IMG/VR virus record: IMGVR_UViG_3300042305_001773
Span: 1-64,000 of that record
Length of the DNA stretch: 64,000 nucleotides
Reading direction: 5' to 3' (one strand)
The notes under the pieces were generated by a model, which saw only the letters and a program-made list of their open reading frames with translations, had not been told where the DNA came from and searched no databases. Below are positions 10,484 through 62,031 of the stretch, in pieces. The position numbers were made by a program, and so were the translations under genes. Each line of letters begins with the position of its first letter. The first letter of the stretch is position 1.

Positions 10484-12364
10484 TCACGGCTTCCACCCGC
10501 TTGTTGCGCCTGTTACACCGAATTGCTCGCCTTGGGCTAAAGCAGGCACATAACTGCTGCCCGCGGTATCGCTGCTTAAACCGCGCTGTACGCTGTTCAT
10601 AAGCCCCTTTTCTTGATACGAACCCAGCATGCGGGTCATCCAATCCGGGTCGTTTGAGATGTTTGCCATGCCGCGCACCATTTCGGGCTGGAACGGCGGC
10701 GGTTCTTTGTGGGCCTGAATTGTTTTTACGCCGTATTTGTTTAAGTTTGTCAGCACGTTTTTACCGATCTTTGTGCCAATTGAATAGTGCAGTACCGGCT
10801 TTTCGAGGTAATGCCCTGTTAAAGTGCTGGGCGCGGCCGATACACTTCCTTCGCGCGGCGTCCAATTACGCTCAATAGTCGAATACGGCACCACGTCATC
10901 TGGTACGTAATCACCGTACTCGTCGGTAAGGCGTACGTGATTTACAAGACCGCGCGCTAACAGCTCGATGTTGCGGCGATGGGCCGTAATACCGCTGTTA
11001 CCCATGACTTGCCGCATGGCCTGCACGAAGTAACGACGGCCTTCGCCTACGCCCTTGTGCCTGACAATTTCTGCCGGATTTGGCATACCCTCTGATATAA
11101 CGTCACCAGCTTCAAGCTCATCGCCCTTTTTGACCGAAAGATTTCTCTCTGTCGGAACATAGTGGTCCTGACCGTTAATCTGCACATAGTGGCCGCCCTG
11201 CGGAGCCGGACGAACTTCCTGTACCCGGCCGTCGAGCTGCGCGTGCACGGCGCCGTCTGGATATTTTTTCGGGACCTGTACAAGCGCGTTGAGCGCTTTA
11301 AAACCAGAAATCGCTCCTGCGCCGCCGACACCGCCAGAATGCTTCGAGCTGATCTGGCTTTGCGTGACTGGTTCCGACAGCGCTTGTGCTGCCGCGATAC
11401 CCACATAATCTCCAATAGGCGGTAAACGCCCTTTTTCCCTGTAACCGACGTCTTTCGCATAAACTCCACCGTCTCCCGGACCGCCGACAATCGGGCTGCG
11501 GACTAAGATATCTTTGGCGCCGCTTTCTTTCAGATCCCGCAGAATCTTTGGCGTCAGCATCGTATTGCGCTTGTACGGCCCGACGGCTCGCGCAAGAAAC
11601 GCGCCTTCGTTATCGGGATCGTCTACGTCGGTCGGGTAGCCGCGCTCTTCTGCCGCCATACGCCGTTCTTCGTCCGTGTCGTCATCATCGTCAGCTGTCA
11701 CAAGCAGGCGGTGCGTCATCTGCGCCAGTTGTTTACCGTAGAAACCGGCGTCAGCTGTAGCCGTCTTGAGGTCGATAACGCCTTTGCGTGTACCGAACGC
11801 GCCGGCGAAATACTCCACCGGGCGCAAACCTTGACTGTAGCCGCGCAGCACCGGAATTGGAATCGGGTCGCCGCGGTGGTCGAGATACTGCATGTCGGCG
11901 CCGAGGATTGAATTCAGCTGAAACTTATTACCGACACCCGACCCGGCAATCTGATGCGCTAAAGGGTTATCTTGGCCCTCAGCTTCCTTGTATACCTTGT
12001 CGAGCAGTTCTTGTTGCGCCGTCTGCGCCAATTCAAGCAGTTTGATATTGCGCTGTTTTTCGTCAAGCCGTTTGTCAGCAAAGATGTCGCGCATCTGACT
12101 CTGTACGCGCAGCTGAACATGCCGCGCGGCCAAAGTCGGCCGAATATCTTTTAACCCAAAAGACAGGCCGTTCGTTGTATATCCGGCGTCACGACCGATA
12201 TCGTGAAGTCGTTTCATAACTTCGCGATATTTTTCTGGGTGATTCTTCGCCAGATCGGTGGCGACGTTTGACATAGTTTTTTTGGTCAATACGCGATCGT
12301 AATCGCGCATCTCTGGCGGCAACGCTTCGTTAATCAGAAGTTGTCCGAGCGTTGTCTTCAGCAT
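10484..12364 (-). CDS. rpoC: RNA polymerase beta' C-terminal subunit
   Basis: Bridge helix (GTRKGVIDLKTATADAGFYGKQL), trigger loop (GIAAAQALSEPVTQSQISSKHSGG), HRRNIELL. Confidence 0.92.
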   Translation of the reverse strand: MLKTTLGQLLINEALPPEMRDYDRVLTKKTMSNVATDLAKNHPEKYREVMKRLHDIGRDAGYTTNGLSFGLKDIRPTLAARHVQLRVQSQMRDIFADKRLDEKQRNIKLLELAQTAQQELLDKVYKEAEGQDNPLAHQIAGSGVGNKFQLNSILGADMQYLDHRGDPIPIPVLRGYSQGLRPVEYFAGAFGTRKGVIDLKTATADAGFYGKQLAQMTHRLLVTADDDDDTDEERRMAAEERGYPTDVDDPDNEGAFLARAVGPYKRNTMLTPKILRDLKESGAKDILVRSPIVGGPGDGGVYAKDVGYREKGRLPPIGDYVGIAAAQALSEPVTQSQISSKHSGGVGGAGAISGFKALNALVQVPKKYPDGAVHAQLDGRVQEVRPAPQGGHYVQINGQDHYVPTERNLSVKKGDELEAGDVISEGMPNPAEIVRHKGVGEGRRYFVQAMRQVMGNSGITAHRRNIELLARGLVNHVRLTDEYGDYVPDDVVPYSTIERNWTPREGSVSAAPSTLTGHYLEKPVLHYSIGTKIGKNVLTNLNKYGVKTIQAHKEPPPFQPEMVRGMANISNDPDWMTRMLGSYQEKGLMNSVQRGLSSDTAGSSYVPALAQGEQFGVTGATSGWKP

Positions 12365-13343: not shown

Positions 13344-16300
13344 TTACGTATTATCTTCCACAATATGCACCGGGGTGTCCACCTCTATTTCGCCGCGTCG
13401 GTATGCCTGTACGGCATCCTGCTTGCTACGAAACACGCGGGGTTTGGCTTTTTTACTGATCCGACTGGACGCCAAGTATAACCCAGTCTGGTAGTCTTTG
13501 TTCGGAACGTAGTGCGCGCGAAAGGTAGACGCAGCAAACAAATTTTTGCTCGGCAGCATCTTTTCAACGGCTTCTTTCGCGGCGTCTTCTGTACTTGGGA
13601 CGTGATACTGCATCGCGTCTCCGTCGAAGTCGGCGCCAAACCCCTTGGTGATCACGGGGTTTACTTCCATAACTTTGTTCTTCGTCAGCTTAGGGTAAAA
13701 CGCCATCATGCCGTAACGGTGTAAAACAGGCGCGCGATTAATAACAATCGGTCGCGACGACATCTGACGGTCAAGCTCGGCGAACGCTTCTTTATTCTTA
13801 TCTTCAACCGCCTGCATCGCCTGCATGCGCGGGAGGCCCCGACGGACGAGGCCGCGGACGACAAACGGTTTGTAAATGTCCCACGCTTTCTCTTCCGGTA
13901 GCGCAACCTCGTCCATATCCAGATCGGGGTTTGGTGTGATGACAGCGCGGCCGACGAGATCTACCGTCGAGCTAAGCAGTTTGCGCTGAACGGTGCCGTA
14001 CTTTGGCGAGTTACCGAACACGTGCCGCAGGAAACCTTTGACATTACGCTCGACGTTCTTGGGCTGCTGCGGCTCGCCTAACCCGGTAACAGCCTTCATT
14101 GAGTCGTACACACTTAGCCGCTCGTCGCCGTAATCAGTTAGCGCGCCAGATGCTTCTTTCAGCGTGTCGTTGGCGTCGAGCAGTTCTTTGTACAAATAGT
14201 TAGCATCAGCTACGAGCGGGAGCTTTTTACTTCCCATTGTGCTCACGGGACGGAAGAGCGGCGGCAAGACTGGTACTTTACTGATCATCCAGTCTTTAGG
14301 GTGCACGCCGGTTGTTTCAGCACTCTTCAAAAAACCCAGCCGGCGCACGGCAGCGTCGCGTAGCGTCTTGCGCCCGGACTTGATATCTAAACGAGCCTGC
14401 TCAATTGCCTTCGGTAAGTTAATTCTTTCGAGCGCGGCTTTGATCGCTGTCGGGCCGGTTTTATCGCCCAGCTGCTCTCGGCCGGCCAGCACACCGCGGA
14501 ACTGCTTCTCGGTCAGGCCAAGCACACGGCGAATCGGGTCTTCCATGACGGGGTTAGGCAGCGGCTCGTGCAACGTGATCTTGCTCCACCGATTACCGCC
14601 GTGACCGCCTGTTAATGTCTCGTCAAACAGCCCGCCTGCAATAGGCTTGAGCCGCCCTTTCCAGTCCACGGTCTCGGAACTCTTTAGCTCGCGCGCGCCT
14701 GCCAGCTCGTCGACGTCTTTGTCGGTCATCGCCATCAAGTTTGAGCGCGTACCCTTGCGCACAACGTTGATACCCGACGCCTTGAGTTGGGTGACAAACT
14801 TCTCGTAAACGTGCGGTACTTTAGGCAGCGGCGGCGTATATCCGGCCATGAACTGCGACCAGTATTCGGGGTTAGCTTGGCCGCGCACCATCTTGGCATC
14901 GCGAATAACCTTGCCGGCACCGTGTGACAGTAACGCGCCCAGATCCAACATGCCGATGCGCTTGGCGCCTTCGCTGCCACCTTTTGCTGGTGTACCTTCG
15001 GCGGTATACGCGCCCATCGACCGGCCTTGCGCCTTTGACTCGCTGGTGTGGTGCAACTTCATGAAGAACCGGTTGCCAGTGAGGACGCCGCCGATTTTAC
15101 GTCCAGTTTCTGGATCGATAACGTCTTCGGTATCTGACAGGCCGTGCGCTGCTAATTCTTTCTGCGCAAACTCAATCAGGTCGCGTTTGTTATCAAAGTC
15201 CTTGAGCTTGTACGGTTTGCCAGTCTTTGCCGCAACTTTACCCAGCGCAGCCTCGATAACTTGCGTCGGGTTAATGCGGCTGATCAGACCCAGCGGCGAG
15301 ACAAGAACTTCAAACGGGTTACCATCGCGATCCTTGGGCATCTGGTCGTCAGGTACGATCTCGGCAACGACGCCCTTATCACCGAAGCGCCCCGTGAGCT
15401 TATCGCCGACGTCCATGGGTGCTTGGTTCTTCACTACAACGCTCACACCCTTCTTGGTGTGCATAACGTCGGTCACGATACCGGGGGCATGATGCTCCCA
15501 CGTGATTGTCTCGTTGGTGAAGTTACCGGCACGCCCACGATGCACTTTGCCGTACACCGTGTCTTTCTTCTTTGCCACAAGCACAAGTGGATCACCAAAC
15601 TTAACCTCAGTGCCCTTTTTGATGGCGCCGTCGTCGTCAAAGTTGTCGAGATACTTTTTGTCGTACTCAGTCGGGAACAAACTCACGAACGCCTTCTTGC
15701 CAACGTGAGTGTTGTCGTCCCACTCGGCTTCGTGCTGATACATGTGCTCAGACGTCAGCCGCTTGGATGCAGATTCAGAAATAACTACCGCGTCTTCGTA
15801 GTTCTTGCCGCGAAACGGCAGATACGCCGTACGTAGATTAAGCCCTAGCGCGGCGCTGCCGTTTTGGTCAGTAAAGTTTGACCGCGCCAGCAGCTGTCCG
15901 GGTTCGACTGTGTCACCCGGTTTCACAAGCGGCGTCTGGTGTAAAAACGTTTTACGGTTGTACGGCATTTCGTTGTACAGATCGATCGTCTTCTTGTTAC
16001 CATCTTTGTCGCGCAGCACGATACCGTCAGGTGTCACGTCCACTACTTGTGCCCGCTCAGTAGCCCGTGTGGCGCCCAGCTTCTCGCCCATCTCGTCTTC
16101 GTGCGACACGCTTTCGTCGTCAGCCTTGGCAGACTGCAACAGCGGCGCCTCGGCGTTTACGAGCGGAAGCGCCTGCGTAAACATTCGGCTACCCATGATC
16201 ACGCGATGACCTTTGATCATGGATTTAATCGGCACCATGTTTGTGAGCGCCGAAAACGTCGTGTCCATGTTGGGCAGACTGAACTGCGCTTCTTTTTTCG

Positions 16301-17747
16301 GCACGTATTTCAGCTTGCCGTTTACGAGCGCGGCTACAACAGGCAGGTTGTTATCTTCTTCGCCCGGAAATACTAGCGGTGTGTCGGCCAGCTCTTGTGG
16401 TGTCTTGTACACCTTCTCGCCGGTTTTCATATCTATAACCGGCGTATACACCTTGCCGTCGGAGCCCTTCATGGCGCCGCGAGCAAACCGCATGTCGACA
16501 CCCACTTTTCCAGACTCGGGCGTGCGAAGGTAGTCGATAAACCCAAGGTGGCTGGGCTGCACAGAACGCGACTCAGCGGGCACGGCGTCGAGCGAACCGA
16601 TGCCGCCCTCACCCATGCGCGTTACACGGGTCTGGTGGTCAAAGATCTCAGCCGGGTTGATTTCTTCAAGACTCGACCCCAAACCGCTGCCAATAAGCGC
16701 AGCTGAGATTGCCTTGTCGAATACACCCGACGGAATGTGATCAATTGACTTCTTCGCCGTGGCTTTCCAGAGTAGCTTGTTAAGAGACTGCCGGTCTTTG
16801 GTAAACCGCTCGGCAATGAGGTCTTCCGGGCCGACGACGGACTGATACACCATGTTGTCTCGGTCGTCGCTCTCGGCCTCGCGGCGATTCACTGCGATTA
16901 ATTTCTTAGTGATCGCCAGAATCGTCTCCGGCGTCATGTTCTTGTATTCAGAACCCAGTGTGCGCCGGGTGACTTCCGGGTCGAGTTCGGTCTTGGCAAA
17001 CTCGGCCGCGATCGCCTGCGCTTTGGCAATGGCGTCTGCGCCCGCGACTGGTTTATTTACAAGCCGGGCGTAAATTTTATCCAGCGTACCCGCATCGCCC
17101 TTCTCCATGTTGACCGCGGTGATCTCGTTGCCCCATGCTTTGCGAATGTCCTGATCCGACACGCCCATAGATTTGAGCAGCGGCATGAGCGGGATCTGCG
17201 CCTGCCCGATGCTGATCTTAAACACGCCAGTCTTGGGGTCGAGGAAGTACCGGTGCGAGCGACCCTTACCCGGAAGCGTGTTTACATGCGCCTCGATTTC
17301 GCCGTTGTCTTTTTCGCGGGTAAACACGCCGGGACGCAACCGCATTTGGTGCGCAAGGGTGTACTCCACACCGCCGTTCACAAACGTGCCAGAGTCGGTG
17401 AGGTACGGCACGTGAGCGATCGTGGCGCGGCGCTGGCCTACAGGCTGGCCGGTTTTGTTATCTGTAAGCGTCCACGTACCTTGCAATCGCCGGGCGAGTG
17501 TCCCTCTAGAAAGGACAGCTTTCTTTTGATCTGCCCTCGTGAAACGTTCAGGTCCTGTGTACCCGACGTCTTGAAGCTGCAGCGTATACAGGTCGTTCTG
17601 CAGCGGCTTGAGACTCTGCGCGCTGTTCAGCGCCTGATTGAAAATGTTATCGCGCATCATGCCAACATCGCCGAATGTGCGCATTGTGGGCGCAACGGGC
17701 GCGGGCATCATCGACGACTTTAGCTCGGGCAGCTCGGGGGCTGGCAT
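13344..17747 (-). CDS. rpoB: RNA polymerase beta fused to beta' N-terminal half
   Basis: beta motifs RTPESGKVG, NYEDAVVIS, GDKLTGRFGDKGVV, MKLHH; beta' motifs VPVLPPLFRP, NRAPVLHR and catalytic GADFDGDAM. Confidence 0.95.
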   Translation of the reverse strand: MPAPELPELKSSMMPAPVAPTMRTFGDVGMMRDNIFNQALNSAQSLKPLQNDLYTLQLQDVGYTGPERFTRADQKKAVLSRGTLARRLQGTWTLTDNKTGQPVGQRRATIAHVPYLTDSGTFVNGGVEYTLAHQMRLRPGVFTREKDNGEIEAHVNTLPGKGRSHRYFLDPKTGVFKISIGQAQIPLMPLLKSMGVSDQDIRKAWGNEITAVNMEKGDAGTLDKIYARLVNKPVAGADAIAKAQAIAAEFAKTELDPEVTRRTLGSEYKNMTPETILAITKKLIAVNRREAESDDRDNMVYQSVVGPEDLIAERFTKDRQSLNKLLWKATAKKSIDHIPSGVFDKAISAALIGSGLGSSLEEINPAEIFDHQTRVTRMGEGGIGSLDAVPAESRSVQPSHLGFIDYLRTPESGKVGVDMRFARGAMKGSDGKVYTPVIDMKTGEKVYKTPQELADTPLVFPGEEDNNLPVVAALVNGKLKYVPKKEAQFSLPNMDTTFSALTNMVPIKSMIKGHRVIMGSRMFTQALPLVNAEAPLLQSAKADDESVSHEDEMGEKLGATRATERAQVVDVTPDGIVLRDKDGNKKTIDLYNEMPYNRKTFLHQTPLVKPGDTVEPGQLLARSNFTDQNGSAALGLNLRTAYLPFRGKNYEDAVVISESASKRLTSEHMYQHEAEWDDNTHVGKKAFVSLFPTEYDKKYLDNFDDDGAIKKGTEVKFGDPLVLVAKKKDTVYGKVHRGRAGNFTNETITWEHHAPGIVTDVMHTKKGVSVVVKNQAPMDVGDKLTGRFGDKGVVAEIVPDDQMPKDRDGNPFEVLVSPLGLISRINPTQVIEAALGKVAAKTGKPYKLKDFDNKRDLIEFAQKELAAHGLSDTEDVIDPETGRKIGGVLTGNRFFMKLHHTSESKAQGRSMGAYTAEGTPAKGGSEGAKRIGMLDLGALLSHGAGKVIRDAKMVRGQANPEYWSQFMAGYTPPLPKVPHVYEKFVTQLKASGINVVRKGTRSNLMAMTDKDVDELAGARELKSSETVDWKGRLKPIAGGLFDETLTGGHGGNRWSKITLHEPLPNPVMEDPIRRVLGLTEKQFRGVLAGREQLGDKTGPTAIKAALERINLPKAIEQARLDIKSGRKTLRDAAVRRLGFLKSAETTGVHPKDWMISKVPVLPPLFRPVSTMGSKKLPLVADANYLYKELLDANDTLKEASGALTDYGDERLSVYDSMKAVTGLGEPQQPKNVERNVKGFLRHVFGNSPKYGTVQRKLLSSTVDLVGRAVITPNPDLDMDEVALPEEKAWDIYKPFVVRGLVRRGLPRMQAMQAVEDKNKEAFAELDRQMSSRPIVINRAPVLHRYGMMAFYPKLTKNKVMEVNPVITKGFGADFDGDAMQYHVPSTEDAAKEAVEKMLPSKNLFAASTFRAHYVPNKDYQTGLYLASSRISKKAKPRVFRSKQDAVQAYRRGEIEVDTPVHIVEDNT

Positions 17748-25224: not shown

Positions 25225-25494
25225 TCAGCTTAAACCCATTAAAAACCGCACAAACACAAAAATCCACGCAAGCAAGCCGCTAATAGCAAAAAAAACCACA
25301 ACCGCGCTCAGGCTGACAACACGCCCGAGCTGCTGAATCGGAATTTCGCGCAACAACCGCCACGCTTTGAGGTAATCAATCGCGCCCGGTTGTTTAGGTG
25401 GCTCCGGCGTAGGTTCGGGGTTCGGTTCCGGCGTTACCGGATCTTTTTTACGCCCAAGGAGGTCACGTAATTTATCAAACAGCGCGTTAGCCAT
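25225..25494 (-). CDS. Membrane protein
   Basis: PE-rich linker, C-terminal TM segment. Confidence 0.5.
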   Translation of the reverse strand: MANALFDKLRDLLGRKKDPVTPEPNPEPTPEPPKQPGAIDYLKAWRLLREIPIQQLGRVVSLSAVVVFFAISGLLAWIFVFVRFLMGLS

Positions 25495-27325
25495 TCTTTT
25501 TACTCCAGCTTTGAATGGTGTCAAAGACGTCGTTGCCGTACAGCTGCGTCGCTTTGTCCAGCATGTTCATCTGCGGCAGTGTTCCAGTCGCGGCAGCCTG
25601 CGCCATTTGATATCTGTACTGCGGATCGAGCATCGAGCGATACAGGTGCGACTTCTGACGCGCGGCCAGAATGAAATCGCCGCGCTGCTTGGCCTTAAGC
25701 AGGTGATCGGTCACGTTTGCAAAGACCGGTTTGTTGTGGTCGTAGACAAACGGCGTCCGCAAATCGAGCAGGTTGCGGAACTGCTGCGCATATACGCTGC
25801 CTGTTGCTGCTTTCACGTGCGAACCTACGACTCCGGCCGGCGCATGAAACCGAAACTTCGTCGGTGTGTGCGTGATACCCTTGTATTTCGGCTTTGGATC
25901 GTCCACGTGCCAGTCTTGCGGTGATTGCGCAATTAATCGCCGCAAGATCTCGTGCTTTCGGTCATATTCGCGGCGATCAGAGTGCGTTTTCGCCGCACGT
26001 AACTCGTCCAGCGTGTTTGGTTTCTTTGTGCTGGGCTCTTCTTCTGCGCCCTTCTCTATTTCTTTGACTTTTTCGTAGTACAGGGGGTCTTCTTGCAGAT
26101 GATCCTTGGCAATTTCTTTGGCGACTTGATCGTTTCTTGTGTGCTCGTGCTCATGTTTAGCTCCTTCGGCTAAAGCTGGGGCAGAAAAATCCCGATCGGG
26201 TAAATTATCGGCTTCACCGCCCGGTAACAGGTCTTTTTGTCCCGAGCGGGAAAGTTCGGTGGCGGCTGTCTTAGCGACCACGGGCGCAAGCAGCTTTTTG
26301 ATGTCGGGGCCGATGTAGTCGTCGCCTTCGGGCAGGCCGGGCGCCAACGTGATGTAAGGATCGGAGCCGACTGTCGCTTTAAACACTCCCGGCTTGAGTT
26401 TGTGTTTTGCCAGCTCTAAGTAATGCTCATGCGTTTTTGACGGGTCGTTGCCCAGTGCGCGAAACGCGGTCGGTTTTACTTTGACGCCAAGTTCTTCGAA
26501 CAACTCGCGCGCCGCGGCTTGCTCCGGCGTCTCTCCTGTTTCCACGCCACCGCCGATAAAACGCCGTTTTCCGAGATTGTCGGGCCATTTTGGATTAGTA
26601 AGCGTTTCAAGCAAGTACTTATTTTCGTACGGTAACACAACGCGCACGCGAGGTTGTGGTGCGTCGGCAGCGGCTTTTAGCTCCCCCCTACTGATGGGGT
26701 TACTAAACCTATGCTCTTCCGTCGTTTCGGCAGGGGTTTCGTAACCCTTGGACTTACCGTTGTCGAGCAACACGCCTTTGCGGCGGGCGGCGACGGTAAT
26801 GTGGAACGGATGGTCGTCGTTGGGAAGTGCGGATAGGCCGTAACTCTTGCGCAGCGCCGAAAGCGCCGGACTGCTGACTTGCACGGCCCAGACTTTGCTT
26901 ACGCCATCTACGTTTTTGACGTCGATTTCTTTCAGGCCGCCCAGCGTGTAGCCGAACATGTGGCCGCGCTCATTGATCTTGTCAGCACCGATAGATGCTA
27001 CCTCATCCGCCGTCATCACCGATATATGCGCATTTACGAGATCGCCCTTAACGTTTGGAACGTTAAACACGCCCGCTGTCGGTAATTCAGCGCCGGGCTC
27101 GGTCAGGGCGTCGAACACACCGCGGACGAGCGCGTTCGGTACAGATAACAAAAGCCAGCCAGATTTGGCGAGATAGAGACGGCCGGCGAGCGGATAACTC
27201 GTGGCGGCCTGCTTGTTGCCGCTGCGATAGAGCCAGCCGAGCGCGTTACCGGCAATATAGGCAGGATGCTCGCGAAAGTAATGCGGTTCCCAAGCGAGCG
27301 GGTCGAGTGCTGAGAGGCTATCCAT
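25487..27325 (-). CDS. Multidomain protein: 2H phosphoesterase + Nudix hydrolase + DUF5661-like + unknown domains
   Basis: HISV/HITV pair; Nudix box GGVETGETPEQAAARELFEELG; EHEH...EIAKDHLQEDPLYY; domains separated by KQA, KAA, KTA, KGA, KAA. Confidence 0.8.
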   Translation of the reverse strand: MDSLSALDPLAWEPHYFREHPAYIAGNALGWLYRSGNKQAATSYPLAGRLYLAKSGWLLLSVPNALVRGVFDALTEPGAELPTAGVFNVPNVKGDLVNAHISVMTADEVASIGADKINERGHMFGYTLGGLKEIDVKNVDGVSKVWAVQVSSPALSALRKSYGLSALPNDDHPFHITVAARRKGVLLDNGKSKGYETPAETTEEHRFSNPISRGELKAAADAPQPRVRVVLPYENKYLLETLTNPKWPDNLGKRRFIGGGVETGETPEQAAARELFEELGVKVKPTAFRALGNDPSKTHEHYLELAKHKLKPGVFKATVGSDPYITLAPGLPEGDDYIGPDIKKLLAPVVAKTAATELSRSGQKDLLPGGEADNLPDRDFSAPALAEGAKHEHEHTRNDQVAKEIAKDHLQEDPLYYEKVKEIEKGAEEEPSTKKPNTLDELRAAKTHSDRREYDRKHEILRRLIAQSPQDWHVDDPKPKYKGITHTPTKFRFHAPAGVVGSHVKAATGSVYAQQFRNLLDLRTPFVYDHNKPVFANVTDHLLKAKQRGDFILAARQKSHLYRSMLDPQYRYQMAQAAATGTLPQMNMLDKATQLYGNDVFDTIQSWSKKNG

Positions 27326-27339
27326 AGCGCGCTTTCAAA

Positions 27340-27411
27340 CTGCCTGAGTAGGACTCGAACCTACAACCCCAGCATTAACAGTGCCGTGCACTACCATTGT
27401 GCTATCAGGCA
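27340..27411 (-). tRNA. tRNA-Asn(GUU)
   Basis: Cloverleaf; TGCCTGA/TCAGGCA acceptor; CTGTTAA anticodon loop; GTTCGAG T-loop; CCA not encoded. Confidence 0.92.
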
Positions 27412-27548
27412 ATGCGTGTCACGGGGTCGCGCTAATACTTGGTGTCGTCATACCCCTGACAGCGTGATGTGAAACTGCCGCGTAGGCCGACACTAGCAGC
27501 AAGAGGCAAAACACAGCGGAAGCGCCCCAAGCGGCTACGCTCAATTGT

Positions 27549-27905
27549 TTACGGACGGTCATTGTCATGCTCGTGCTCCAGTTCGCGGTCACGTTCGTGC
27601 ACAATGGTTACTTTAATTCCGGCTCCAGCTAACAAAGAGATAGCAAGATCAGTTAAAGTGGACCCGCCCATGCCCGCCAGCACGCAAATGCCGATCAGGC
27701 CGTAGACGTTTTCGGATTTCCGATAGTTTTGATACCAAATCAGAGCGATAGCCAAGCCGAGAAATCCGGCGTTTAGCATCGCGCTGACTATCGCTAGTTT
27801 AGACAGTTTCTTGGCAAACCGCAAAAGGGTTGCCAACCCGGCAAACGCAGCTGCGCCAAACGCGCTCAAAAGCACCGACAACGAATGTAATGTTTCGTCG
27901 CCCAT
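27549..27905 (-). CDS. Putative holin
   Basis: Three TM helices, GICVLAGMGG, charged C-terminal tail. Confidence 0.6.
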   Translation of the reverse strand: MGDETLHSLSVLLSAFGAAAFAGLATLLRFAKKLSKLAIVSAMLNAGFLGLAIALIWYQNYRKSENVYGLIGICVLAGMGGSTLTDLAISLLAGAGIKVTIVHERDRELEHEHDNDRP

Positions 27906-27939
27906 GGTTTTAACCGCCTGTAATTGTTAGTGTTGTAAA

Positions 27940-28163
27940 TTGTGTCAAAAGCCCCTGCGATCCCCTGTCCGCAGGACCTATCACGGCCGAAGCCGCGATT
28001 CTGCAGCAACTTTCAAGGACATAATTTCGTCCCGTGTGGCATTTGCTGCTCCTCCGCCCGTGAGCCCGACAAAATCTGACCACGGAACCTGTAACCCCCG
28101 CGGCATCCCTGCCTTAGAAGCTACGCCTAACCAGCCGACCACCACGGCTAACTTTTGACACAA
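27940..28163 (-). ncRNA. Structured ncRNA candidate
   Basis: 12-bp terminal stem TTGTGTCAAAAG/CTTTTGACACAA; UUCG hairpin; several internal stems. Confidence 0.55.
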
Positions 28164-28178
28164 CTCTAGTTTAACATG

Positions 28179-28211
28179 TTTTATCCGGCACAAGATAATG
28201 CCGGATAAAAC
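28179..28211. terminator. Perfect 13-bp hairpin, likely terminator
   Basis: GTTTTATCCGGCA-loop-TGCCGGATAAAAC. Confidence 0.5.
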
Positions 28212-28241
28212 TGCAGCGACAAATTGTCAAAGAGCGCGCTG

Positions 28242-28694
28242 CTAAATGTACCGTGCCGGAGAATTGCTGCACAGACCAGCTGGTTCAAACTGGTCGAGCC
28301 AGCCCGGGGCGTTTTCAGGAAGAAACGCAATCGCTCGCGGCGGCAATTCTCTTGGCGCCGGAGTCCAAATAAATTGCGCGCTAGTCAGCGTCGGCGTTTC
28401 GCTGTCGAAGAACGCGTGCGCGCCAACATTGCACAAAGCGTCGAGTGTGTCGCCGTCAAAGCACCGCGACCAGACGCGCTGCTTGGAGAAAAACCCGGGC
28501 GGGGCAATGTTAAACCCGCCGTCAAAAGGCAGCAGAAAACTACCCTGATGAAACACGACGTTTACGCACACATGCCAACCAGCGTTTAACGTCGCGGTAA
28601 CGTACGCCAGCCGATTTTCTTTTTCGGGCTGTGCGCCATGAATGTTGCCGAGATTGGCAATTAAAATACCATCAAACCGCGTGTTGCGCGCCAT
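28242..28694 (-). CDS. Degenerate glycerophosphodiester phosphodiesterase-like protein
   Basis: IANLGNIHG..EN..Y...LNAGWHVCVNV aligns with HRGN..EN..Y..AL..G.DVEID. Confidence 0.55.
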   Translation of the reverse strand: MARNTRFDGILIANLGNIHGAQPEKENRLAYVTATLNAGWHVCVNVVFHQGSFLLPFDGGFNIAPPGFFSKQRVWSRCFDGDTLDALCNVGAHAFFDSETPTLTSAQFIWTPAPRELPPRAIAFLPENAPGWLDQFEPAGLCSNSPARYI

Positions 28695-28781: not shown

Positions 28782-29816
28782 TCAAAGAATCTTGGCGGCG
28801 ATCAGGCAGCCCCGCGCGACAGCGTGCAGCGGATCTTTGGCGTGGCGAACTTCTTTCACCGGCAGCGGAAAACCATTCTCCGCAAGTTTCTTAGTGAACA
28901 TCTCCACGAAACCTTTGGCACGCGTTGTTCCGCCGGCTAGAGATATCAAAATCGGCTCTTTGAACTTGGGCAGCGCCTTGTGGTCACGGAGCGCAGAGGC
29001 GAGCTGCTTTGTCGTGTAATCGATTAAACGCTCGTAGTACACGCTCACGGCAGCAAGGATCGCGTTGTCTCCGCCGCCCTCACCAATCACAAACGTGCCG
29101 TGCTCTTTCTCCGCCTGAACTACCGAGTCCGGCTCGTTAGTTGCCACCGCGGTCATGCGGTCGATCCAGTCACCTGACTTGGTCGTCGAGAACAGCACCG
29201 TGGGCTCGCCGTTGAGCATCACGCACACGTTCACCATACCGGCGCCCCACGACAGGCCGATGCCGGTATAGTCGTCGTGCTCTAGCTCCGAGTAGCACAG
29301 CGCTTCGGCTTCGTTGATAGCCCGGGCGGCGTATCCCTGCTCAGCCAGCACCGTGCGCACCACGTCTTCGTGATACGCCACGTCGAAGTCGTCGTCTTCT
29401 TGGTCGACGGGCTGTGCCGGCACACAGAAGATCAGCTTTTCGTGGGGTGTGCTAGCCGTGCCGACCACTTCCTTGAGGATAAACGCCAGCACGCGCTTGG
29501 CTTCCTTTTCCTTGGGGCTGACGACACCACGGTACATGGGACGCTTGGCCGAGTCATTGCGCTCGACAGCTTTCTCGATGGCGTCTTGGCCGAGAATGAT
29601 AAAACTCCCGTCGGCGTCCTTTACGAAGACTTTGCCCTGCAGCCCCTTTTCGATCATCTTCGTGGCCACGGGCGTCGTCGGCTTGATGACGTAGAACGCA
29701 TCGCGAAAGTCTTTGTACTGCACGTTGCCGACCGTGTGCGGATCGGTCGTGGAGTTTGCGGTGGCGTCTTGGGCCAGCACGATAAACGATGTTCCGACGT
29801 CTAAACCTTTAGCCAT
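28782..29816 (-). CDS. Actin-like ATPase (MreB/MamK-related fold)
   Basis: Phosphate-1 GLDVGTS, connect INEAEA, phosphate-2 SWGAGMVN, adenosine LAGGTT. Confidence 0.85.
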   Translation of the reverse strand: MAKGLDVGTSFIVLAQDATANSTTDPHTVGNVQYKDFRDAFYVIKPTTPVATKMIEKGLQGKVFVKDADGSFIILGQDAIEKAVERNDSAKRPMYRGVVSPKEKEAKRVLAFILKEVVGTASTPHEKLIFCVPAQPVDQEDDDFDVAYHEDVVRTVLAEQGYAARAINEAEALCYSELEHDDYTGIGLSWGAGMVNVCVMLNGEPTVLFSTTKSGDWIDRMTAVATNEPDSVVQAEKEHGTFVIGEGGGDNAILAAVSVYYERLIDYTTKQLASALRDHKALPKFKEPILISLAGGTTRAKGFVEMFTKKLAENGFPLPVKEVRHAKDPLHAVARGCLIAAKIL

Positions 29817-29935: not shown

Positions 29936-30297
29936 CACTTTCCCTTTAGCTGCGCAAGCTTCGACACGGACGAACTAATATCATCCTGTGTCTGCGTTGT
30001 TTTGCCAAGTTCGAGTTGTTGCGTTTTTTGCAACGTCTCGGTGTTAATTGCGCCCACGTATTTACCAGTGTCGATTTCAATCTTACCTTTGCCGGACGCA
30101 CTTTCTTTCATGGCCGCGCGCAGAGTATTTGTCGCGGGAAGTACAGATGTTGTCGGCGCGTATGTCGGCACAATACCGGCCATGCGTGCCACGAGCCAGT
30201 CCAGCCGGCCGATTGCGTAACCCAGCGCCACGCTTCCGGCGACAATTAACGCGACAACAGAGTAAGGCAGAATTAACATGTTTCCGGCTTGCGCCAT
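29935..30297 (-). CDS. Membrane-anchored protein
   Basis: N-terminal TM segment; just upstream of the actin-like gene. Confidence 0.55.
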   Translation of the reverse strand: MAQAGNMLILPYSVVALIVAGSVALGYAIGRLDWLVARMAGIVPTYAPTTSVLPATNTLRAAMKESASGKGKIEIDTGKYVGAINTETLQKTQQLELGKTTQTQDDISSSVSKLAQLKGK

Positions 30298-30977
30298 CCC
30301 CGGTGTGATTTGATGCGCCCGGCGTTCACACTGCGCATATGACAGTCACTGAGTCCGTTATGGCGACAAAAGTCTTTCAGATTGTGAATGATAACGACGT
30401 CGCCGTCTGGGTTGAGAAAGTTGTAGGTCTTGGCGTACTTTTCGCGAATCACGTTGCGCCCGCGCTCACGCAACTCTTCCATGCGCTGTTCGGGAATGCC
30501 GTGCACACCCGTTTTCATTTCGACTGATTTGGTGCCGCCAATGCTCGCCCATTTTTGCCGGGTTTCTGCGTCCATGCCCGCAAACCCAGACCCGTTGTCG
30601 TGCGAGCGCTGAGTGGCTAGTTTGCGCTGCGCGGGCGTGAGCAGAAATCGCCCGGCCGCGTTGCGATTTAAACAGACCTCTGGGCCCAAATGATCGGTGT
30701 CGGCGTGCGCTGTTTTAATCAGTTCTGTTTCTGCTTTTGATAACTCCACCGCGGCTTTTTTCGACTCCCGACGATATTGCGCCTGTAGCACAACTTTCAC
30801 GGCGTCTGCCTGATATTCGGCGTGCTCGGGATCGTTGTAGTGCGCAAACGTAACCGGCGACCCAAAGTAATAATGGTCATCTTCGGGGCTGCGGTCGGTA
30901 ATGCGCGAGCCGTAATAGAACTTGTACCCCAGCGACGGGTACAGGATTACGTACAAATAGTACCAGCGTTTACGCAT
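30273..30977 (-). CDS. Free-standing GIY-YIG/Seg-like homing endonuclease
   Basis: YLY...YYGSR...YFGS, CLNRN, C-terminal NUMOD-like NLKDFCRHNGL...HRGW. Confidence 0.7.
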   Translation of the reverse strand: MRKRWYYLYVILYPSLGYKFYYGSRITDRSPEDDHYYFGSPVTFAHYNDPEHAEYQADAVKVVLQAQYRRESKKAAVELSKAETELIKTAHADTDHLGPEVCLNRNAAGRFLLTPAQRKLATQRSHDNGSGFAGMDAETRQKWASIGGTKSVEMKTGVHGIPEQRMEELRERGRNVIREKYAKTYNFLNPDGDVVIIHNLKDFCRHNGLSDCHMRSVNAGRIKSHRGWRKPETC

Positions 30978-59265: not shown

Positions 59266-59466
59266 AAACAACGTTGTGCTCAGGTATGCTAGCTGGCACG
59301 GGATATCGGTCTTGGGGCTCGGGCATACCATACCACCCTAGTTTCCTAATCCGCTACGTTGTGTGTTCTAAATGCCGATGCTGGGCACTACTCCAGCAGT
59401 TTTAATCGCGTGCTCGGCATTCACACACACGACGATAAAGGGCAACGCTAGCTAGTCGTGCCCTCA

Positions 59467-59807
59467 TGGAGGCGGCGGGAATCGAACCCGCGTCCAGAAT
59501 GGTTTCCACGTAAACGTCTACATCGTTAGCGCGTTGTTCTCACACTACGCGCAAAGCCAGCCGATTATCGGCGTCAGGTGGGCTACCACCATCTTTGGCT
59601 GTCTCTCCAGCCTGTCCGCCGTCTTCCCGGCTTCCAGCGTGATGGGCGATAACGTCACGCGCGTTACCCGGTCACTGCTCAGGCAGCGAGAGCGGGGACA
59701 CTGTTGAAAGTGCCAATTAACATGTAATCGATTTTTATGCTGGCCCTTCGATCAACCAGCCGATGCAATCTACGCTTCTCTCCATCTGTCGATACCAGTA
59801 CGCCCCC
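59467..59807 (-). ncRNA. ssrA: tmRNA; tag (A)GTFNSVPALAA*
   Basis: GGGGGCG/CGCCTCCA acceptor with G3-U70; GGACGCGGGTTCGATTCCCGC T-arm; tag ORF ending ALAA-TGA. Confidence 0.93.
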
Positions 59808-60031
59808 TTAAGTTGTTGGCTGTATTCCCATTGTGAGCTTACGGCGGGTAGACCCGCCTTCATTTACCGCTGGCTCTTTTGTACGTAATTTATCCAGCAG
59901 CACCAACAACTAAATCGAAAAAGCCTCGCCGCAGGGCTGTGGTCATATCGAGTATGTTGTACCCTCCCACAATTTAAGGTAGTTAACTTTCCCCTGCATT
60001 TCGCAGCGCTGTACACACGCTGCCGAGACAA

Positions 60032-60105
60032 TAACCCGGGTGGGAGTCGAACCCACAACAAGTAGATCCTAAGTCTACCGCCTCTGCCAGTTGGGCTACC
60101 GAGTT
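60032..60105 (-). tRNA. tRNA-Leu(UAG), short variable loop
   Basis: Cloverleaf; GTAGA-CTTAGGA-TCTAC. Confidence 0.88.
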
Positions 60106-60109
60106 ATAT

Positions 60110-60182
60110 TGACCCCACGGGGATTCGAACCCCGGTAAACGGAACGAAAATCCGTTGTCCTAGGCCACTAGACGATGGGGCC
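60110..60182 (-). tRNA. tRNA-Glu(UUC)
   Basis: Cloverleaf; ACGGA-TTTTCGT-TCCGT. Confidence 0.9.
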
Positions 60183-60190
60183 GCGTGCGC

Positions 60191-60331
60191 CTAAGTATTG
60201 TCCGCGCACTCTTTCTTTTCAAGCAGCCGCTCTGTTTTCCAGAACAGACGCTTTCCGAACTTCTTCATGTGCTTGTTCCAGCCCATAATTTTTGGGCGCA
60301 CATGCAGCAGTCCGCGCTTTTTTGTGGTCAT
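60191..60331 (-). CDS. Small basic protein, 46 aa
   Basis: MTTKKRGLLHVRPKIMGWNKHMKKFGKRLFWKTER...; AAGGA RBS. Confidence 0.5.
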   Translation of the reverse strand: MTTKKRGLLHVRPKIMGWNKHMKKFGKRLFWKTERLLEKKECADNT

Positions 60332-60357
60332 GCTGTTCCTTTGATAACAAAACCCAG

Positions 60358-60428
60358 TAGCCCGCCGAGGAGTCGAACCCCGCGTTGCGAGTTAATAAGA
60401 CTCGCTTGCCAACCGGTTTCCGCGGGCC
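60358..60428 (-). tRNA. Atypical tRNA-like RNA, anticodon UAU (Ile?)
   Basis: Good acceptor stem and T-arm; 6-bp anticodon stem; U37; degenerate D-arm. Confidence 0.55.
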
Positions 60429-60491
60429 GCGTGGGTGGGGCGCCAGAGGCTTGGGCTACCTCCAGCGCCCCACCGTCAGCGAGTCTAACGC

Positions 60492-60854
60492 TTACCGGTA
60501 GCGCTTGCACGCATACCAGCGGCCATCCCTGCCACGCGCGACCCCTTGGTCAACGACCGCTCTGCCGCTATTGCTGTAGCAGCAGTTTCCCAGCGCCTGC
60601 TCGGGTGTTGAGCCCATGCCGACGCCCTCCATTCCAGAGTTTCCCCCGTAATGTCCCATGCGGCCATTGCTGGCCTGCAGCTCGGCTACGCCCTGCGCCG
60701 AACCGGTGTGCCCGGCATAAGACGTAGCGTACGAGTAGGACTTTGCAGGAGCCTGAACCTGAGACGGTGTGTAGGAACGACGGTGTCGCGGGGCAGCATG
60801 CGCAACGCTGACCAGCGAAAGAACGACGGCTACACACATGAGAAAACGGAACAT
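60492..60854 (-). CDS. Secreted protein with minimal CAP/SCP-like domain
   Basis: Signal peptide; MGH...EGVG...CCY...WYACKRY. Confidence 0.6.
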   Translation of the reverse strand: MFRFLMCVAVVLSLVSVAHAAPRHRRSYTPSQVQAPAKSYSYATSYAGHTGSAQGVAELQASNGRMGHYGGNSGMEGVGMGSTPEQALGNCCYSNSGRAVVDQGVARGRDGRWYACKRYR

Positions 60855-60921
60855 AACGATCCTCCGTGACCCCGCTGCGGGTGTGCGCAGCGTGAAAAGA
60901 AACAGGCCCCACACCGGGCAG

Positions 60922-60995
60922 TAGGCGCAAAGGGACTCGAACCCCTAACCCCCTGCGTGTAAAGCAGGTGCTCTGACCAATTGAGCTATGCGCCT
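60922..60995 (-). tRNA. tRNA-Val(UAC)
   Basis: Cloverleaf; CCTGC-TTTACAC-GCAGG. Confidence 0.92.
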
Positions 60996-61001
60996 ACAGG
61001 T

Positions 61002-61388: not shown

Positions 61389-61404
61389 CTCCTTTCTATC
61401 AGAT

Positions 61405-61477
61405 TAGGATCGGTGGGACTCGAACCCACACTGGGAGGATTTTAAGTCCTCTGCCTCTGCCATTGGGCTACGATCCC
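61405..61477 (-). tRNA. tRNA-Leu(UAA), short variable loop
   Basis: Cloverleaf; GAGGA-CTTAAAA-TCCTC. Confidence 0.9.
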
Positions 61478-61487
61478 CCGCCGCTGT

Positions 61488-61986: not shown

Positions 61987-62031
61987 TTCAAAACCTCCTT
62001 GTTTGGAAATGACCTTCAAACAACAAAACAT

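What the first reader, a model, noticed from the sequence alone, without database searches (positions are those of the whole stretch)
27940..28163. 224-nt structured RNA upstream of the holin-like gene
Seen: perfect 12-bp end pairing; C-UUCG-G hairpin (27981-27998); GCAGCAA/TTGCTGC, CCTGCG/CGCAGG and AGCCG/CGGCT stems; preceded by a 13-bp hairpin. It could be a trans-acting ncRNA or a lysis-timing leader (inference).
Basis: partly seen in the sequence, partly recalled or inferred. Interest (0 to 1): 0.6.

Follow-up and report, generated by a model that had tools for sequence, protein, structure and literature searches.

The report
New jumbo-phage leader RNA before holin-like gene
A 224-base stretch in a 205-kb uncultured freshwater phage is a real, strongly conserved, intricately folded RNA of a previously undescribed family that sits as the leader of a small holin-like membrane-protein gene, and may be a new way for phages to control that gene.

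Summary
Window 27940-28163 encodes, on the minus strand, a ~224-nt RNA with seven helices closed by a 14-bp end helix, plus a pseudoknot. In 53 distinct homologues, 97.5% of cells pair and 47 of 65 pairs show compensatory changes; slid controls give 34-44% paired. No Rfam 15 family matches. The 70-aa ORF is not conserved.

The RNA occurs once per genome in about 100 viral or metagenomic contigs, mostly ~200-kb phages, and in no bacterial genome. An extended -10-like box precedes it at a fixed distance in 46 of 53 copies. A conserved 118-aa three-helix holin-like gene follows 20-70 nt later, with no conserved terminator between. The association is one-to-one in every locus tested.

An invariant apical hairpin, CA(G/U)GGA(U/C)G, fits the CsrA/RsmA recognition motif. 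This phage and five of five diverse relatives encode a CsrA homologue.

Best reading: a new cis-acting leader RNA that sets expression of the holin-like gene, possibly through phage CsrA. The mechanism is inferred. A stable trans-acting RNA remains a serious rival.

The parts
27940..28163 (-). The structured RNA domain (~224 nt; the covariance model hit is 27937-28166): P1-P7 plus a pseudoknot
   Evidence: Folds. Alignments A1/A3 and RNAalifold. Covariance model R1 scores 235 bits here and finds a single copy in the 205-kb genome. Pair counts.
28150..28163 (-). P1 5' strand. It pairs with 27940-27953 (the consensus P1 is 28150-28161 / 27942-27953).
   Evidence: I2. helix 1: 12 pairs, 10 with compensatory changes. 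Coordinates.
28133..28149 (-). P2 hairpin AGCCG-UGGUGGU-CGGCU with a conserved loop
   Evidence: helix 2: 100% paired, 4 of 5 pairs compensatory..
28138..28142 (-). Pseudoknot 5' side (GUGGU in the P2 loop). It pairs with GCCAC at 28036-28040 in the P5 internal loop.
   Evidence: Mutual-information scan: columns 29/132 give CG 27, UA 16, UG 10. helix 3: 100% paired, 3 of 5 pairs with double changes.
28126..28132 (-). J2/3, invariant GGUUAGG
   Evidence: Invariant columns in A1. Coordinates.
28090..28125 (-). P3, a long stalk that is hypervariable in sequence. Its apical octamer CAGGGAUG (28104-28111) is invariant as CA(G/U)GGA(U/C)G.
   Evidence: P3 forms a 10-17-bp hairpin in every homologue. 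Octamer counts are 44/8/1. The motif fits A(N)GGA in a loop (PMC4066749).
28058..28085 (-). P4 hairpin CCGUGGUCAG...GUCG.G..CACGG, nearly invariant
   Evidence: (helix 5).
28050..28057 (-). J4/5 with the conserved GG(A/U/G)GG (GGAGG here)
28003..28049 (-). P5a/P5b, with conserved internal loops AAUGCCACAC and UGAAAG
   Evidence: helices 6 and 7: 11 of 13 pairs compensatory..
27982..27997 (-). P6, a variable hairpin, mostly capped by UUCG
   Evidence: helix 8: 6 of 6 pairs compensatory..
27954..27975 (-). P7 hairpin with a conserved loop A(N)AGGGGA and invariant GGGGAUC
   Evidence: helix 9..
28168..28176 (-). Extended -10-like box TGTTAAACT. It ends 4-7 nt before the first P1 pair, so it is the probable promoter of the RNA.
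   Evidence: TGnTAnAAT-type box at this distance in 46 of 53 distinct loci. In the other 7 a TGATAAAT-type box lies about 25 nt further upstream. The pattern is rare in the window.
28178..28211 (-). 13-bp hairpin just after the stop codon of the upstream 150-aa gene. It is a probable terminator or insulator of upstream transcription.
   Evidence: I1. A hairpin of varying sequence lies at the same place in relatives.
28223..28234 (-). Conserved box CTCTTTGACAAT of unknown role, too far from the -10-like box to serve as its -35
   Evidence: Conserved in most loci that carry the 150-aa gene. Unique in the window beyond chance matches.
27906..27939 (-). A+U-rich, poorly conserved linker with a weak Shine-Dalgarno (AGGCGG). 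No terminator.
   Evidence: T-run of 4 or more in only 28%. Predicted unpaired for 27914-27939.
27866..27913 (-). Predicted imperfect 18-bp hairpin that encloses the start codon of the 118-aa gene
   Evidence: about -18 kcal/mol on top of the RNA domain. A comparable hairpin is predicted in about half of the lineages, with one synonymous double change, GAC/UCG to GAU/UCA.
27549..27905 (-). 118-aa protein with three helices and a charged C-terminal tail, holin-like. It is always the gene downstream of the RNA.
   Evidence: linkage. (30 invariant residues). (Atlas 0.90-0.91 to holin superfamily III clusters). (three helices; best BFVD matches are named Holin, E 7e-3 to 1). No Pfam or PHROG family.
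27419..27568 (-). 49-aa overlapping ORF with one transmembrane segment, conserved in many relatives
   Evidence: tblastn gives 40-98% identity at the same place in many loci.
27339..27412 (-). tRNA-Asn(GUU), next on the same strand

Best explanation
SHOWN. Window 27940-28163 (minus strand) encodes a member of a previously uncatalogued family of about 225-nt structured RNAs. The family is confined to a clade of roughly 200-kb uncultured freshwater jumbo phages.
- The RNA folds into seven helices closed by a long P1.
- A 5-bp pseudoknot joins the P2 loop to the P5 internal loop.
- About 70 nucleotides in loops and junctions are invariant.
- It lies directly behind an extended -10-like box.
- It lies 20-70 nt in front of a highly conserved 118-aa three-helix membrane protein, with no conserved terminator between. 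As read from the DNA, it is therefore the 5' leader of that mRNA.

INFERRED. It acts in cis as a folded sensor or docking domain that sets when and how much of the holin-like protein is made.

The most concrete version of this is as follows. The invariant apical hairpin C-A-(G/U)-G-G-A-(U/C)-G is displayed on a stalk that is hypervariable in sequence. Further conserved GGA-containing loops (L7 GGGGAUC, J4/5 GGAGG) lie nearby. Together they bind a CsrA-family protein, which this phage and its relatives encode. Occupancy would change ribosome access to the A+U-rich linker and to the start codon. In about half of the lineages that start codon is buried in a local hairpin.

A small-molecule ligand (a riboswitch) in place of, or in addition to, the protein is equally compatible with the data.
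For: Structure and strand.

New family:
- No Rfam hit at gathering thresholds, nor at E<=10, on three divergent copies.
- No cultured-phage match by DNA or by protein.

One-to-one linkage with the 118-aa gene:
- All 75 loci fetched with the protein have exactly one copy upstream, on the same strand.
- All 14 further viral loci and 27 metagenome loci fetched with an RNA pattern, and having enough sequence, carry the gene downstream.
- A profile search for the protein added one new contig, also RNA-positive.
- The upstream neighbour varies, being either the 150-aa gene or the volactin-like gene directly.

Promoter-like box at a fixed distance: 46 of 53 copies.

No conserved terminator after P1.

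Start-codon hairpin.

CsrA link:
- L3 octamer counts are 44/8/1, all CANGGANG.
- CsrA homologues bind A(N)GGA, and a dimer bridges sites 10-63 nt apart (PMC4066749).
- The phage's own genome encodes a CsrA (PF02599, 71 bits), and so do 5 of 5 diverse complete relatives.
- The phage CsrA aligns end to end with RsmE and E. coli CsrA. By my reading of that alignment the residues aligned with L4, R6 and R44 are kept; that these are RNA-binding residues is from memory.

Transcription: pieces of two freshwater metatranscriptome assemblies lie on the RNA. One 185-nt contig lies wholly inside it. Another runs from the RNA into the 118-aa ORF.
Against: - No conserved expression platform was found. P1 is long and stable, and does not overlap the ribosome-binding site.
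- The linker is unconserved.
- GGA lies within -30..+8 of the start codon in only 12 of 48 copies.
- The start-codon hairpin is absent or weak in about half of the lineages (mean z -1.3).
- Complementarity between P1 and the ORF is weak and was not corrected for relatedness.
- The whole neighbourhood is syntenic in this clade, so linkage alone is weaker evidence of coupling than it looks.
- Only L3 is a full A(N)GGA hairpin. The elaborate fold and pseudoknot are not needed for CsrA binding.
- Co-occurrence of CsrA and the RNA within one clade is not independent evidence.
- GGA-loop hairpins are not enriched genome-wide.
- The 185-nt metatranscriptome contig confined to the RNA fits a separately stable RNA just as well.
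- Contigs cannot show RNA ends, and DNA carry-over is possible.
- The holin assignment is weak.
Confidence: 0.45

Rival explanations
1. A stable, trans-acting noncoding RNA or RNP component. It would merely share a promoter with the 118-aa gene and be released from the transcript by processing. Possible roles are a decoy or sponge for phage or host CsrA, or a self-assembling 'ornate' RNA.
For: - The closed P1 brings the 5' and 3' ends together, as in stable RNAs.
- Sequence conservation is very high: 98% between genomes whose neighbouring 150-aa protein is 83-90% identical.
- The fold is far more elaborate than a leader needs.
- In the small lake metatranscriptome the only piece on this 1.6-kb stretch is a 185-nt contig wholly inside the RNA.
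- A short T-run follows P1 in 57% of copies.
- There are GGA loops, the phage encodes CsrA, and one copy gives a weak rsmX-like hit at 17 bits, E 0.35.
Against: - No conserved terminator or recognisable processing site follows P1.
- The linker is too short (20-70 nt) to hold a separate promoter, so the ORF's mRNA must start with this RNA.
- The strict one-to-one adjacency to a single gene is not expected of a free-standing RNA.
- There are only about 3-5 unpaired GGA motifs, roughly what composition alone predicts by my own rough estimate, far fewer than in CsrB-type sponges.
Confidence: 0.3
2. An mRNA-processing or stabilising element. It could be a self-cleaving or capping ribozyme. It could also be a 5' 'lock' that must be cut away to free a ribosome standby site, as in type I toxin mRNAs. 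A third option is a nuclease-resistant 5' domain that protects the mRNA of a toxic membrane protein.
For: - It sits at the very 5' end of an mRNA for a small membrane protein.
- In the window an unpaired A+U-rich linker is followed by a start codon buried in a hairpin. Such a hairpin is predicted in about half of the lineages.
- It has a pseudoknot and many invariant nucleotides, as catalytic RNAs do.
- A 2H-phosphoesterase/Nudix protein gene lies two genes downstream.
Against: - No match to any ribozyme family in Rfam.
- No cleavage site can be inferred.
- A simple stabiliser would not need about 70 invariant loop nucleotides.
- Nothing was tested directly.
Confidence: 0.12
3. Not a functional RNA: a protein-coding stretch (the 70-aa or 72-aa ORFs), a DNA-level element such as a MITE with terminal inverted repeats, or chance structure.
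For: ORFs of 70 aa (minus strand) and 72 aa (plus strand) overlap the region. There is a 12-bp terminal inverted repeat.
Against: - The ORF is interrupted at different places in homologues and shows no codon periodicity.
- Compensatory changes occur in 47 of 65 pairs, and strand-specific G-U pairs are invariant.
- It is single-copy in the genome, so it is not a mobile repeat.
- Its position is fixed in all relatives.
Confidence: 0.02

Closest known systems
Riboswitch-type 5' leaders of small membrane-protein genes (for example yybP-ykoY/Mn2+, fluoride and guanidine classes; recalled from general knowledge)
   Same: A conserved multi-helix domain closed by P1, with invariant junction and loop nucleotides and variable stems. 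It always sits in the 5' leader of one gene family that encodes a small membrane protein.
   Different: - No Rfam family matches.
- At 224 nt with seven helices it is larger than most aptamers.
- P1 is 12-17 bp and does not overlap the ribosome-binding site.
- No conserved terminator or sequestering alternative was found.
- The ligand is unknown.
CsrA/RsmA-bound RNAs: leaders such as hcnA, and the sponges CsrB and RsmX/Y/Z
   Same: An invariant hairpin CA-NGGA-NG, further GGA in loops and junctions, and a CsrA homologue encoded by the same genome (PMC4066749).
   Different: - Only one full A(N)GGA hairpin.
- No conserved GGA at the Shine-Dalgarno or start codon (12 of 48 copies).
- The rsmX hit is 17 bits against a cut-off of 56, on one copy only.
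- A rigid pseudoknotted fold with many other invariant nucleotides is not a feature of the known sponges.
- I found no report of a phage-encoded RNA partner of a phage CsrA in the papers I read (PMC7366521, PMC11879866).
GOLLD and ROOL, large ornate phage-associated RNAs (from memory; both are Rfam families)
   Same: Phage-encoded, complex, highly conserved folds of unknown function, often near tRNA genes. Here tRNA-Asn lies about 530 nt downstream.
   Different: - They are several times larger and are not tied to one protein gene.
- The Rfam scan of the window, which would include their models if they are in release 15, gives no hit in the region.
- This RNA is strictly the leader of one gene.
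Phage lambda PR' leader ('6S' transcript) and HK022 put RNAs (from memory)
   Same: A promoter-proximal RNA, some 200 nt long in lambda, lying directly in front of the lysis cassette. The put RNAs act in cis on the transcribing polymerase.
   Different: - No terminator follows here.
- There is no sequence or structural similarity.
- The gene downstream is only holin-like, and the genes further downstream include RNA-polymerase subunits rather than a late structural operon.
Type I toxin mRNA leaders (tisB, hok; from memory)
   Same: An mRNA for a small membrane-damaging protein with a structured 5' region. There is an unpaired stretch that could serve as a ribosome standby site, and a start codon in a hairpin.
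   Different: - The protein is larger (118 aa).
- No antisense RNA was looked for.
- The structured domain has conserved loops that such locks do not need.

Membership tests
Any Rfam 15 family (4227 models) | Score at or above the family's gathering threshold | tested here: not met
   No hit in 27700-28400 at gathering thresholds or at E<=10. On two divergent copies there are only chance-level hits; the best is rsmX at 17.1 bits against 56.
Riboswitch (generic) | Conserved, covarying aptamer in the 5' leader of a consistent gene family | tested here: met
Riboswitch (generic) | Expression platform: a terminator, or Shine-Dalgarno/start sequestration that competes with the aptamer | tested here: inconclusive
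   No conserved terminator. A start-codon hairpin is predicted in about half of the lineages. Alternative pairing with P1 is weak. No consistent RNA partner of the translation-initiation region was found.
Riboswitch (generic) | Direct, specific ligand binding | not testable with these tools
   Needs in-line probing, ITC or a similar assay.
CsrA/RsmA-binding RNA | A(N)GGA motifs in loops or single strands, at least two, 10-63 nt apart (PMC4066749) | tested here: inconclusive
   L3 is CA(G/U)GGA(U/C)G in 53 of 53 copies. L7 GGGGAUC is invariant but lacks the A. J4/5 has GGA in most copies but not all.
CsrA/RsmA-binding RNA | A site overlapping the Shine-Dalgarno or start codon (for repressed mRNAs) | tested here: not met
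   GGA within -30..+8 in 12 of 48 copies; A(N)GGA in 9 of 48.
CsrA/RsmA-binding RNA | A CsrA-family protein present in the system | tested here: met
   PF02599 scores 71 bits in the phage's own genome, and is over the cut-off in 5 of 5 relatives. The alignment to RsmE/CsrA covers residues 1-48 or more.
CsrA/RsmA-binding RNA | Measured binding | not testable with these tools
   Needs EMSA or ITC. The complex predictor offered here takes proteins only.
Retron msr-msd RNA | Adjacent reverse transcriptase | tested here: not met
   No PF00078 match anywhere in the 205-kb genome. The downstream gene is a membrane protein.
Bacterial Y RNA / YrlA | A Ro60 (TROVE) protein partner in the genome; an Rfam match | tested here: not met
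   No PF05731 match. No Rfam hit.
GOLLD / ROOL | Match to the family model; length over 500 nt | tested here: not met
   No Rfam hit. The length is 224 nt.
Small protein-coding gene (70-aa ORF 27981-28193) | ORF kept open and codon-periodic substitution in homologues | tested here: not met
Holin (for the downstream 118-aa protein) | Small protein with 1-4 transmembrane helices and a charged C-terminal tail | tested here: met
   Three helices, 2-30, 36-60 and 67-94, in a model of modest confidence (pLDDT 64.5). The tail is rich in D/E/H/R.
Holin (for the downstream 118-aa protein) | Membership of a curated holin family | tested here: not met
   No Pfam or PHROG family. There are only leads: Atlas feature score 0.90-0.91 to Phage_holin_3_x clusters, and BFVD fold matches named Holin at E 7e-3 to 1.
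Holin (for the downstream 118-aa protein) | Lysis function; an adjacent endolysin | not tested
   No endolysin was recognised among the neighbours scanned. The function needs an expression assay.

The most novel reading that the evidence does not exclude
This is the first RNA partner of a phage-encoded CsrA, or alternatively a new riboswitch class. On this reading it is a dedicated, pseudoknotted leader domain through which jumbo phages gate translation of a holin-like membrane protein, in effect an RNA-based lysis or membrane-remodelling clock.
Probability: 0.25. Interest if true: 0.85.

Novelty: new variant of a known kind. Interest (0 to 1): 0.68.

Why it matters
Large RNAs with a pseudoknot and this much covariation are rare. 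Historically they have turned out to be riboswitches, ribozymes or RNP cores.

This one is confined to a widespread clade of uncultured, roughly 200-kb freshwater phages and is welded to a single small membrane-protein gene. If that protein is the holin, the RNA would be a new kind of control over the timing of lysis.

The invariant CsrA-type hairpin, together with a phage-encoded CsrA, gives a directly testable link. It bears on an open question: what phage CsrA homologues do. PMC11879866 says their role had not been tested before its own knock-down.

Even if the mechanism proves different, the alignment and model give a ready-made new RNA family for structural and biochemical work.

Tried and rejected
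- **Rfam.** At gathering thresholds, and at permissive thresholds on three copies, nothing matched.
- **tRNA/tmRNA scan.** Nothing in the region.
- **Cultured phages.** No match by DNA or by the 118-aa protein.
- **Bacterial genomes.** Eleven pattern hits, none confirmed by the model, so there is no cellular or prophage copy.
- **Coding reading.** Rejected.
- **Mobile-element reading.** Rejected, since the element is single-copy.
- **Retron and Y-RNA readings.** Rejected: no RT and no Ro60.
- **Intrinsic terminator after P1.** Not conserved.
- **The sigma-70 scan.** It found no canonical promoter for the minus strand here. The extended -10-like box emerged only from comparison.
- **The TTGACA-containing box.** It lies 45-60 nt from the -10-like box and is not a -35. 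A 'hairpin-interrupted promoter' idea did not hold, because the spacing is not constant.
- **RNA-to-initiation-region pairing.** Duplex predictions scatter, with only a loose preference for the P2 region.
- **P1 5' strand against the ORF.** A small excess of complementarity (p 0.01, uncorrected for relatedness), strong only in some lineages.
- **Genome-wide enrichment of GGA-loop hairpins.** None: 161 against about 225 in shuffles, by a crude test.
- **L3 as a GNRA tetraloop.** Unlikely, because 9 of 53 copies have UGGA.
- **Fold search for the 118-aa protein.** Only weak matches from a model of modest confidence.
- **Literature searches.** No description of this RNA was found.
- **Reads.** Only assembled contigs were on hand, so RNA ends, strand and abundance could not be read.

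Full report
**Setting.** The window is the first 64 kb of a 205,044-bp IMG/VR virus record rated complete. Essentially all long ORFs lie on the minus strand. The phage carries the following:
- a tmRNA and six tRNAs;
- split multisubunit RNA-polymerase beta-like genes;
- a helicase and a PhoH-like protein;
- a volactin-type actin-like protein, and a 612-aa 2H-phosphoesterase/Nudix protein.

The finding lies in the 336-nt gap between a 150-aa ORF (28242-28694) and a 118-aa ORF (27549-27905), both on the minus strand.

**The observation.**
- As single sequences, both strands fold better than all shuffles.
- The minus strand is much the more stable: -98.2 kcal/mol, z -4.86, with the centroid close to the MFE. 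The plus strand gives -69.3 kcal/mol.

**Relatives.** The 118-aa protein retrieved 75 viral loci.
- blastn finds the 224-nt element upstream of the gene in nearly all of them, at 68-99% identity.
- A covariance model built from 39 distinct copies finds exactly one copy in each of the 75 loci. The copy is always on the gene's strand, upstream of the gene.
- The model finds one copy in the phage's own whole genome.

A DNA pattern made of three invariant segments gave these results:
- 93 viral stretches. The 16 new loci are all model-positive, and all 14 with enough downstream sequence carry the same gene.
- 43 metagenome stretches. 29 are model-positive, and all 27 with enough sequence carry the gene.
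- 11 stretches in 185,579 bacterial and archaeal genomes, none model-positive.

A profile search for the protein returned about 92 viral loci, matching the 93 RNA stretches. Its one new contig also has the RNA. The protein has 270 clusters of relatives. All are unnamed or carry generic names, and many lie on contigs of about 200 kb. Nothing similar is in 50,697 deposited phage genomes.

**Structure.** RNAalifold on the first alignment gave 57 pairs, 39 of them with compensatory changes. A mutual-information scan on 53 distinct copies placed nearly all top pairs in the predicted helices. It extended P6 and revealed a pseudoknot between the P2 loop (G-U-G-G-Y) and the 5' internal loop of P5 (R-C-C-R-C). 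Two positions of that pseudoknot covary: 29/132 gives CG 27, UA 16, UG 10, and 26/135 gives UA 38, UG 10, CG 5.

With the pseudoknot included, the counts are:
- 65 pairs are 97.5% paired, and 47 carry double changes.
- None of 500 column shuffles reaches any measure.
- Sliding the partners by 1-3 columns drops pairing to 34-44% and double-change pairs to 17-20.

P3 is hypervariable in sequence yet forms a 10-17-bp hairpin in every copy. Invariant G-U pairs would be A-C mismatches on the other strand, so the RNA is read from the minus strand. About 70 positions are invariant. They are concentrated in the P2 loop, J2/3 (GGUUAGG), the P3 tip, P4, J4/5 (GGAGG), both P5 internal loops and the P7 loop.

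**Not coding.** In the frame of the 70-aa ORF, homologues have stops at widely different places. Variable columns are spread evenly over codon positions, 0.71/0.69/0.64.

**Not a known family.** No Rfam 15 model matches the region at gathering thresholds, or at E<=10 on three divergent copies. The only curiosity is a 17-bit, E 0.35 match of one copy to rsmX, whose cut-off is 56. Four literature searches and one targeted look found no description of it.

**Transcription-unit anatomy.**
- In 46 of 53 distinct loci a TGnTAnAAT box (an extended -10 type) ends 4-7 nt before the first P1 pair. In the window it is TGTTAAACT at 28168-28176.
- In the remaining seven loci a similar box lies about 25 nt further upstream.
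- Upstream of the box lies a hairpin of variable sequence, at 28178-28211 in the window. Where the 150-aa gene is present there is also a conserved CTCTTTGACAAT box, unique in the window.
- The upstream gene differs between lineages: the 150-aa gene, or the volactin-like gene directly.
- Downstream of P1 there is no conserved hairpin-plus-U terminator. A T-run of 3 or more occurs in 57% of copies and of 4 or more in 28%.
- The A+U-rich, unconserved linker of 20-70 nt is too short for a separate promoter.

As read from the DNA, the RNA is therefore the 5' leader of the 118-aa gene's mRNA.

In the window the full leader folds with the RNA domain unchanged and the linker open. The start codon sits inside an imperfect 18-bp hairpin worth about -18 kcal/mol. 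Comparable hairpins are predicted in about half of the lineages, with z of -2 to -6 in two large groups. They include a synonymous double change, GAC/UCG to GAU/UCA. In other lineages they are weak or absent.

**Transcript evidence.** Only assembled contigs of two freshwater metatranscriptomes from two studies were available.
- In one, the only piece on the 1.6-kb stretch is a 185-nt contig at 27955-28139, wholly inside the RNA.
- In the other, a relative's contig runs from inside the RNA through the linker into the ORF (27686-28089). Another contig joins the RNA's 5' end to upstream sequence.

This shows presence in RNA libraries. It does not show RNA ends or strand.

**The downstream protein.** It is unusually conserved, with 30 invariant residues among 17 diverse members. 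It has three predicted helices and a charged tail and no Pfam or PHROG family. Two weak leads point to holin superfamily III: feature similarity of 0.90-0.91, and fold matches that are mostly named Holin, at E 7e-3 to 1 from a pLDDT-64 model. A 49-aa single-transmembrane ORF overlapping its 3' end is conserved in many relatives. 'Holin-like' is a reasonable label, not a finding.

**A mechanistic lead.** The P3 tip is C-A-(G/U)-G-G-A-(U/C)-G in all 53 copies, with counts of 44, 8 and 1. The flanking CA and UG pair around an NGGA loop.
- This fits the A(N)GGA core bound by CsrA/RsmA proteins (PMC4066749). From memory, it also fits the hcnA/SELEX hairpin consensus.
- Nine copies have UGGA, which argues against a GNRA tetraloop role.
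- GGGGAUC in the P7 loop is invariant, and GG(A/U/G)GG in J4/5 is conserved.

Prompted by this, I searched the phage genome.
- It encodes a CsrA-family protein: PF02599, 71 bits, at G000:C1:160301-160447. That lies outside the window.
- The protein aligns end to end with RsmE and E. coli CsrA. By my reading of that alignment the residues aligned with L4, R6 and R44 are kept; that these are RNA-binding residues is from memory.
- Five of five diverse complete relatives that carry the RNA also encode one.
- csrA genes occur in about 1% of sequenced phages (PMC7366521). Their role in phages was called untested before one knock-down (PMC11879866).

Against a classical CsrA-repressed leader:
- GGA lies near the start codon in only 12 of 48 copies.
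- The co-occurrence is within one clade.
- The rest of the fold is unexplained by CsrA.

**Weighing.**
- *Shown:* a real, conserved, pseudoknotted RNA of a new family on the minus strand. It is phage-specific, single-copy, placed behind a promoter-like box, and welded to one gene.
- *Inferred at about 0.45:* it works in cis on that gene's expression, by protein (CsrA) and/or ligand binding. This would act on ribosome access to an open linker and an often-buried start codon.
- *Rival at about 0.3:* a stable trans-acting RNA or RNP released from the same transcript.
- *Rival at about 0.12:* a processing, ribozyme or stabiliser element.
- *Excluded in practice:* coding, mobile-element and chance readings.

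Noticed in passing
G000:C1:160301-160447 (outside the window; locus L314:1357-1647, minus strand): The phage encodes a CsrA-family RNA-binding protein (PF02599, 71 bits). Homologues are present in 5 of 5 diverse complete relatives. Its targets are unknown.
   Followed up: partly
window 59464-59807 (-): Phage-encoded tmRNA (Rfam 97.5 bits; ARAGORN tag peptide GTFNSVPALAA). It lies next to a cluster of five tRNA genes at 60031-62102.
   Followed up: no
window 28782-29816 (-): A 344-aa actin-like protein matching Pfam Volactin (E 8e-62). It is 74-98% identical across the clade, directly upstream of the RNA or one gene removed from it.
   Followed up: no
window 25487-27325 (-): A 612-aa protein combining a 2H phosphoesterase ('Swiss Army Knife' type), a Nudix domain and DUF5661. 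It follows tRNA-Asn and is conserved in synteny. It may be an RNA-repair or decapping enzyme.
   Followed up: no
window 13344-17747 and 10484-12364 (-): Large ORFs matching PHROG families annotated as RNA polymerase beta subunit. They suggest a phage multisubunit RNA polymerase, as in phiKZ-like jumbo phages.
   Followed up: no
window 28223-28234 (-): The box CTCTTTGACAAT is conserved in relatives between the 150-aa gene's stop codon and the hairpin. It is unique in the window and its role is unknown.
   Followed up: partly
window 27419-27568 (-): A 49-aa ORF with one transmembrane segment overlaps the 3' end of the 118-aa gene in another frame. It is conserved at 40-98% in many relatives. It may be a second membrane or lysis protein.
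   Followed up: partly
window 27866-27876 and 27945-27955: A 10-of-11 direct repeat (minus strand GG(U/G)GCUUUUGA) is shared by the 3' strand of P1 and codons 10-13 of the 118-aa ORF. Both can pair with the P1 5' strand or with the UUAAAA just before the start codon. It could be an alternative pairing, but it is not conserved outside the window's group.
   Followed up: partly
loci L084, L106, L108, L138, L144, L158, L167 (upstream of the RNA): In this subgroup the -10-like box (TGATAAAT type) lies about 25 nt further upstream. Their RNAs may therefore carry an extra 5' extension or helix.
   Followed up: no
window 30273-30977 (-): A 234-aa ORF with PHROG matches to HNH/homing endonucleases lies about 2 kb upstream of the RNA.
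   Followed up: no
protein P0055: A relative of the 118-aa protein lies on a 202,923-bp contig filed under Sphingorhabdus sp. This is probably a phage genome binned with a MAG, and is a weak hint at the host group.
   Followed up: no
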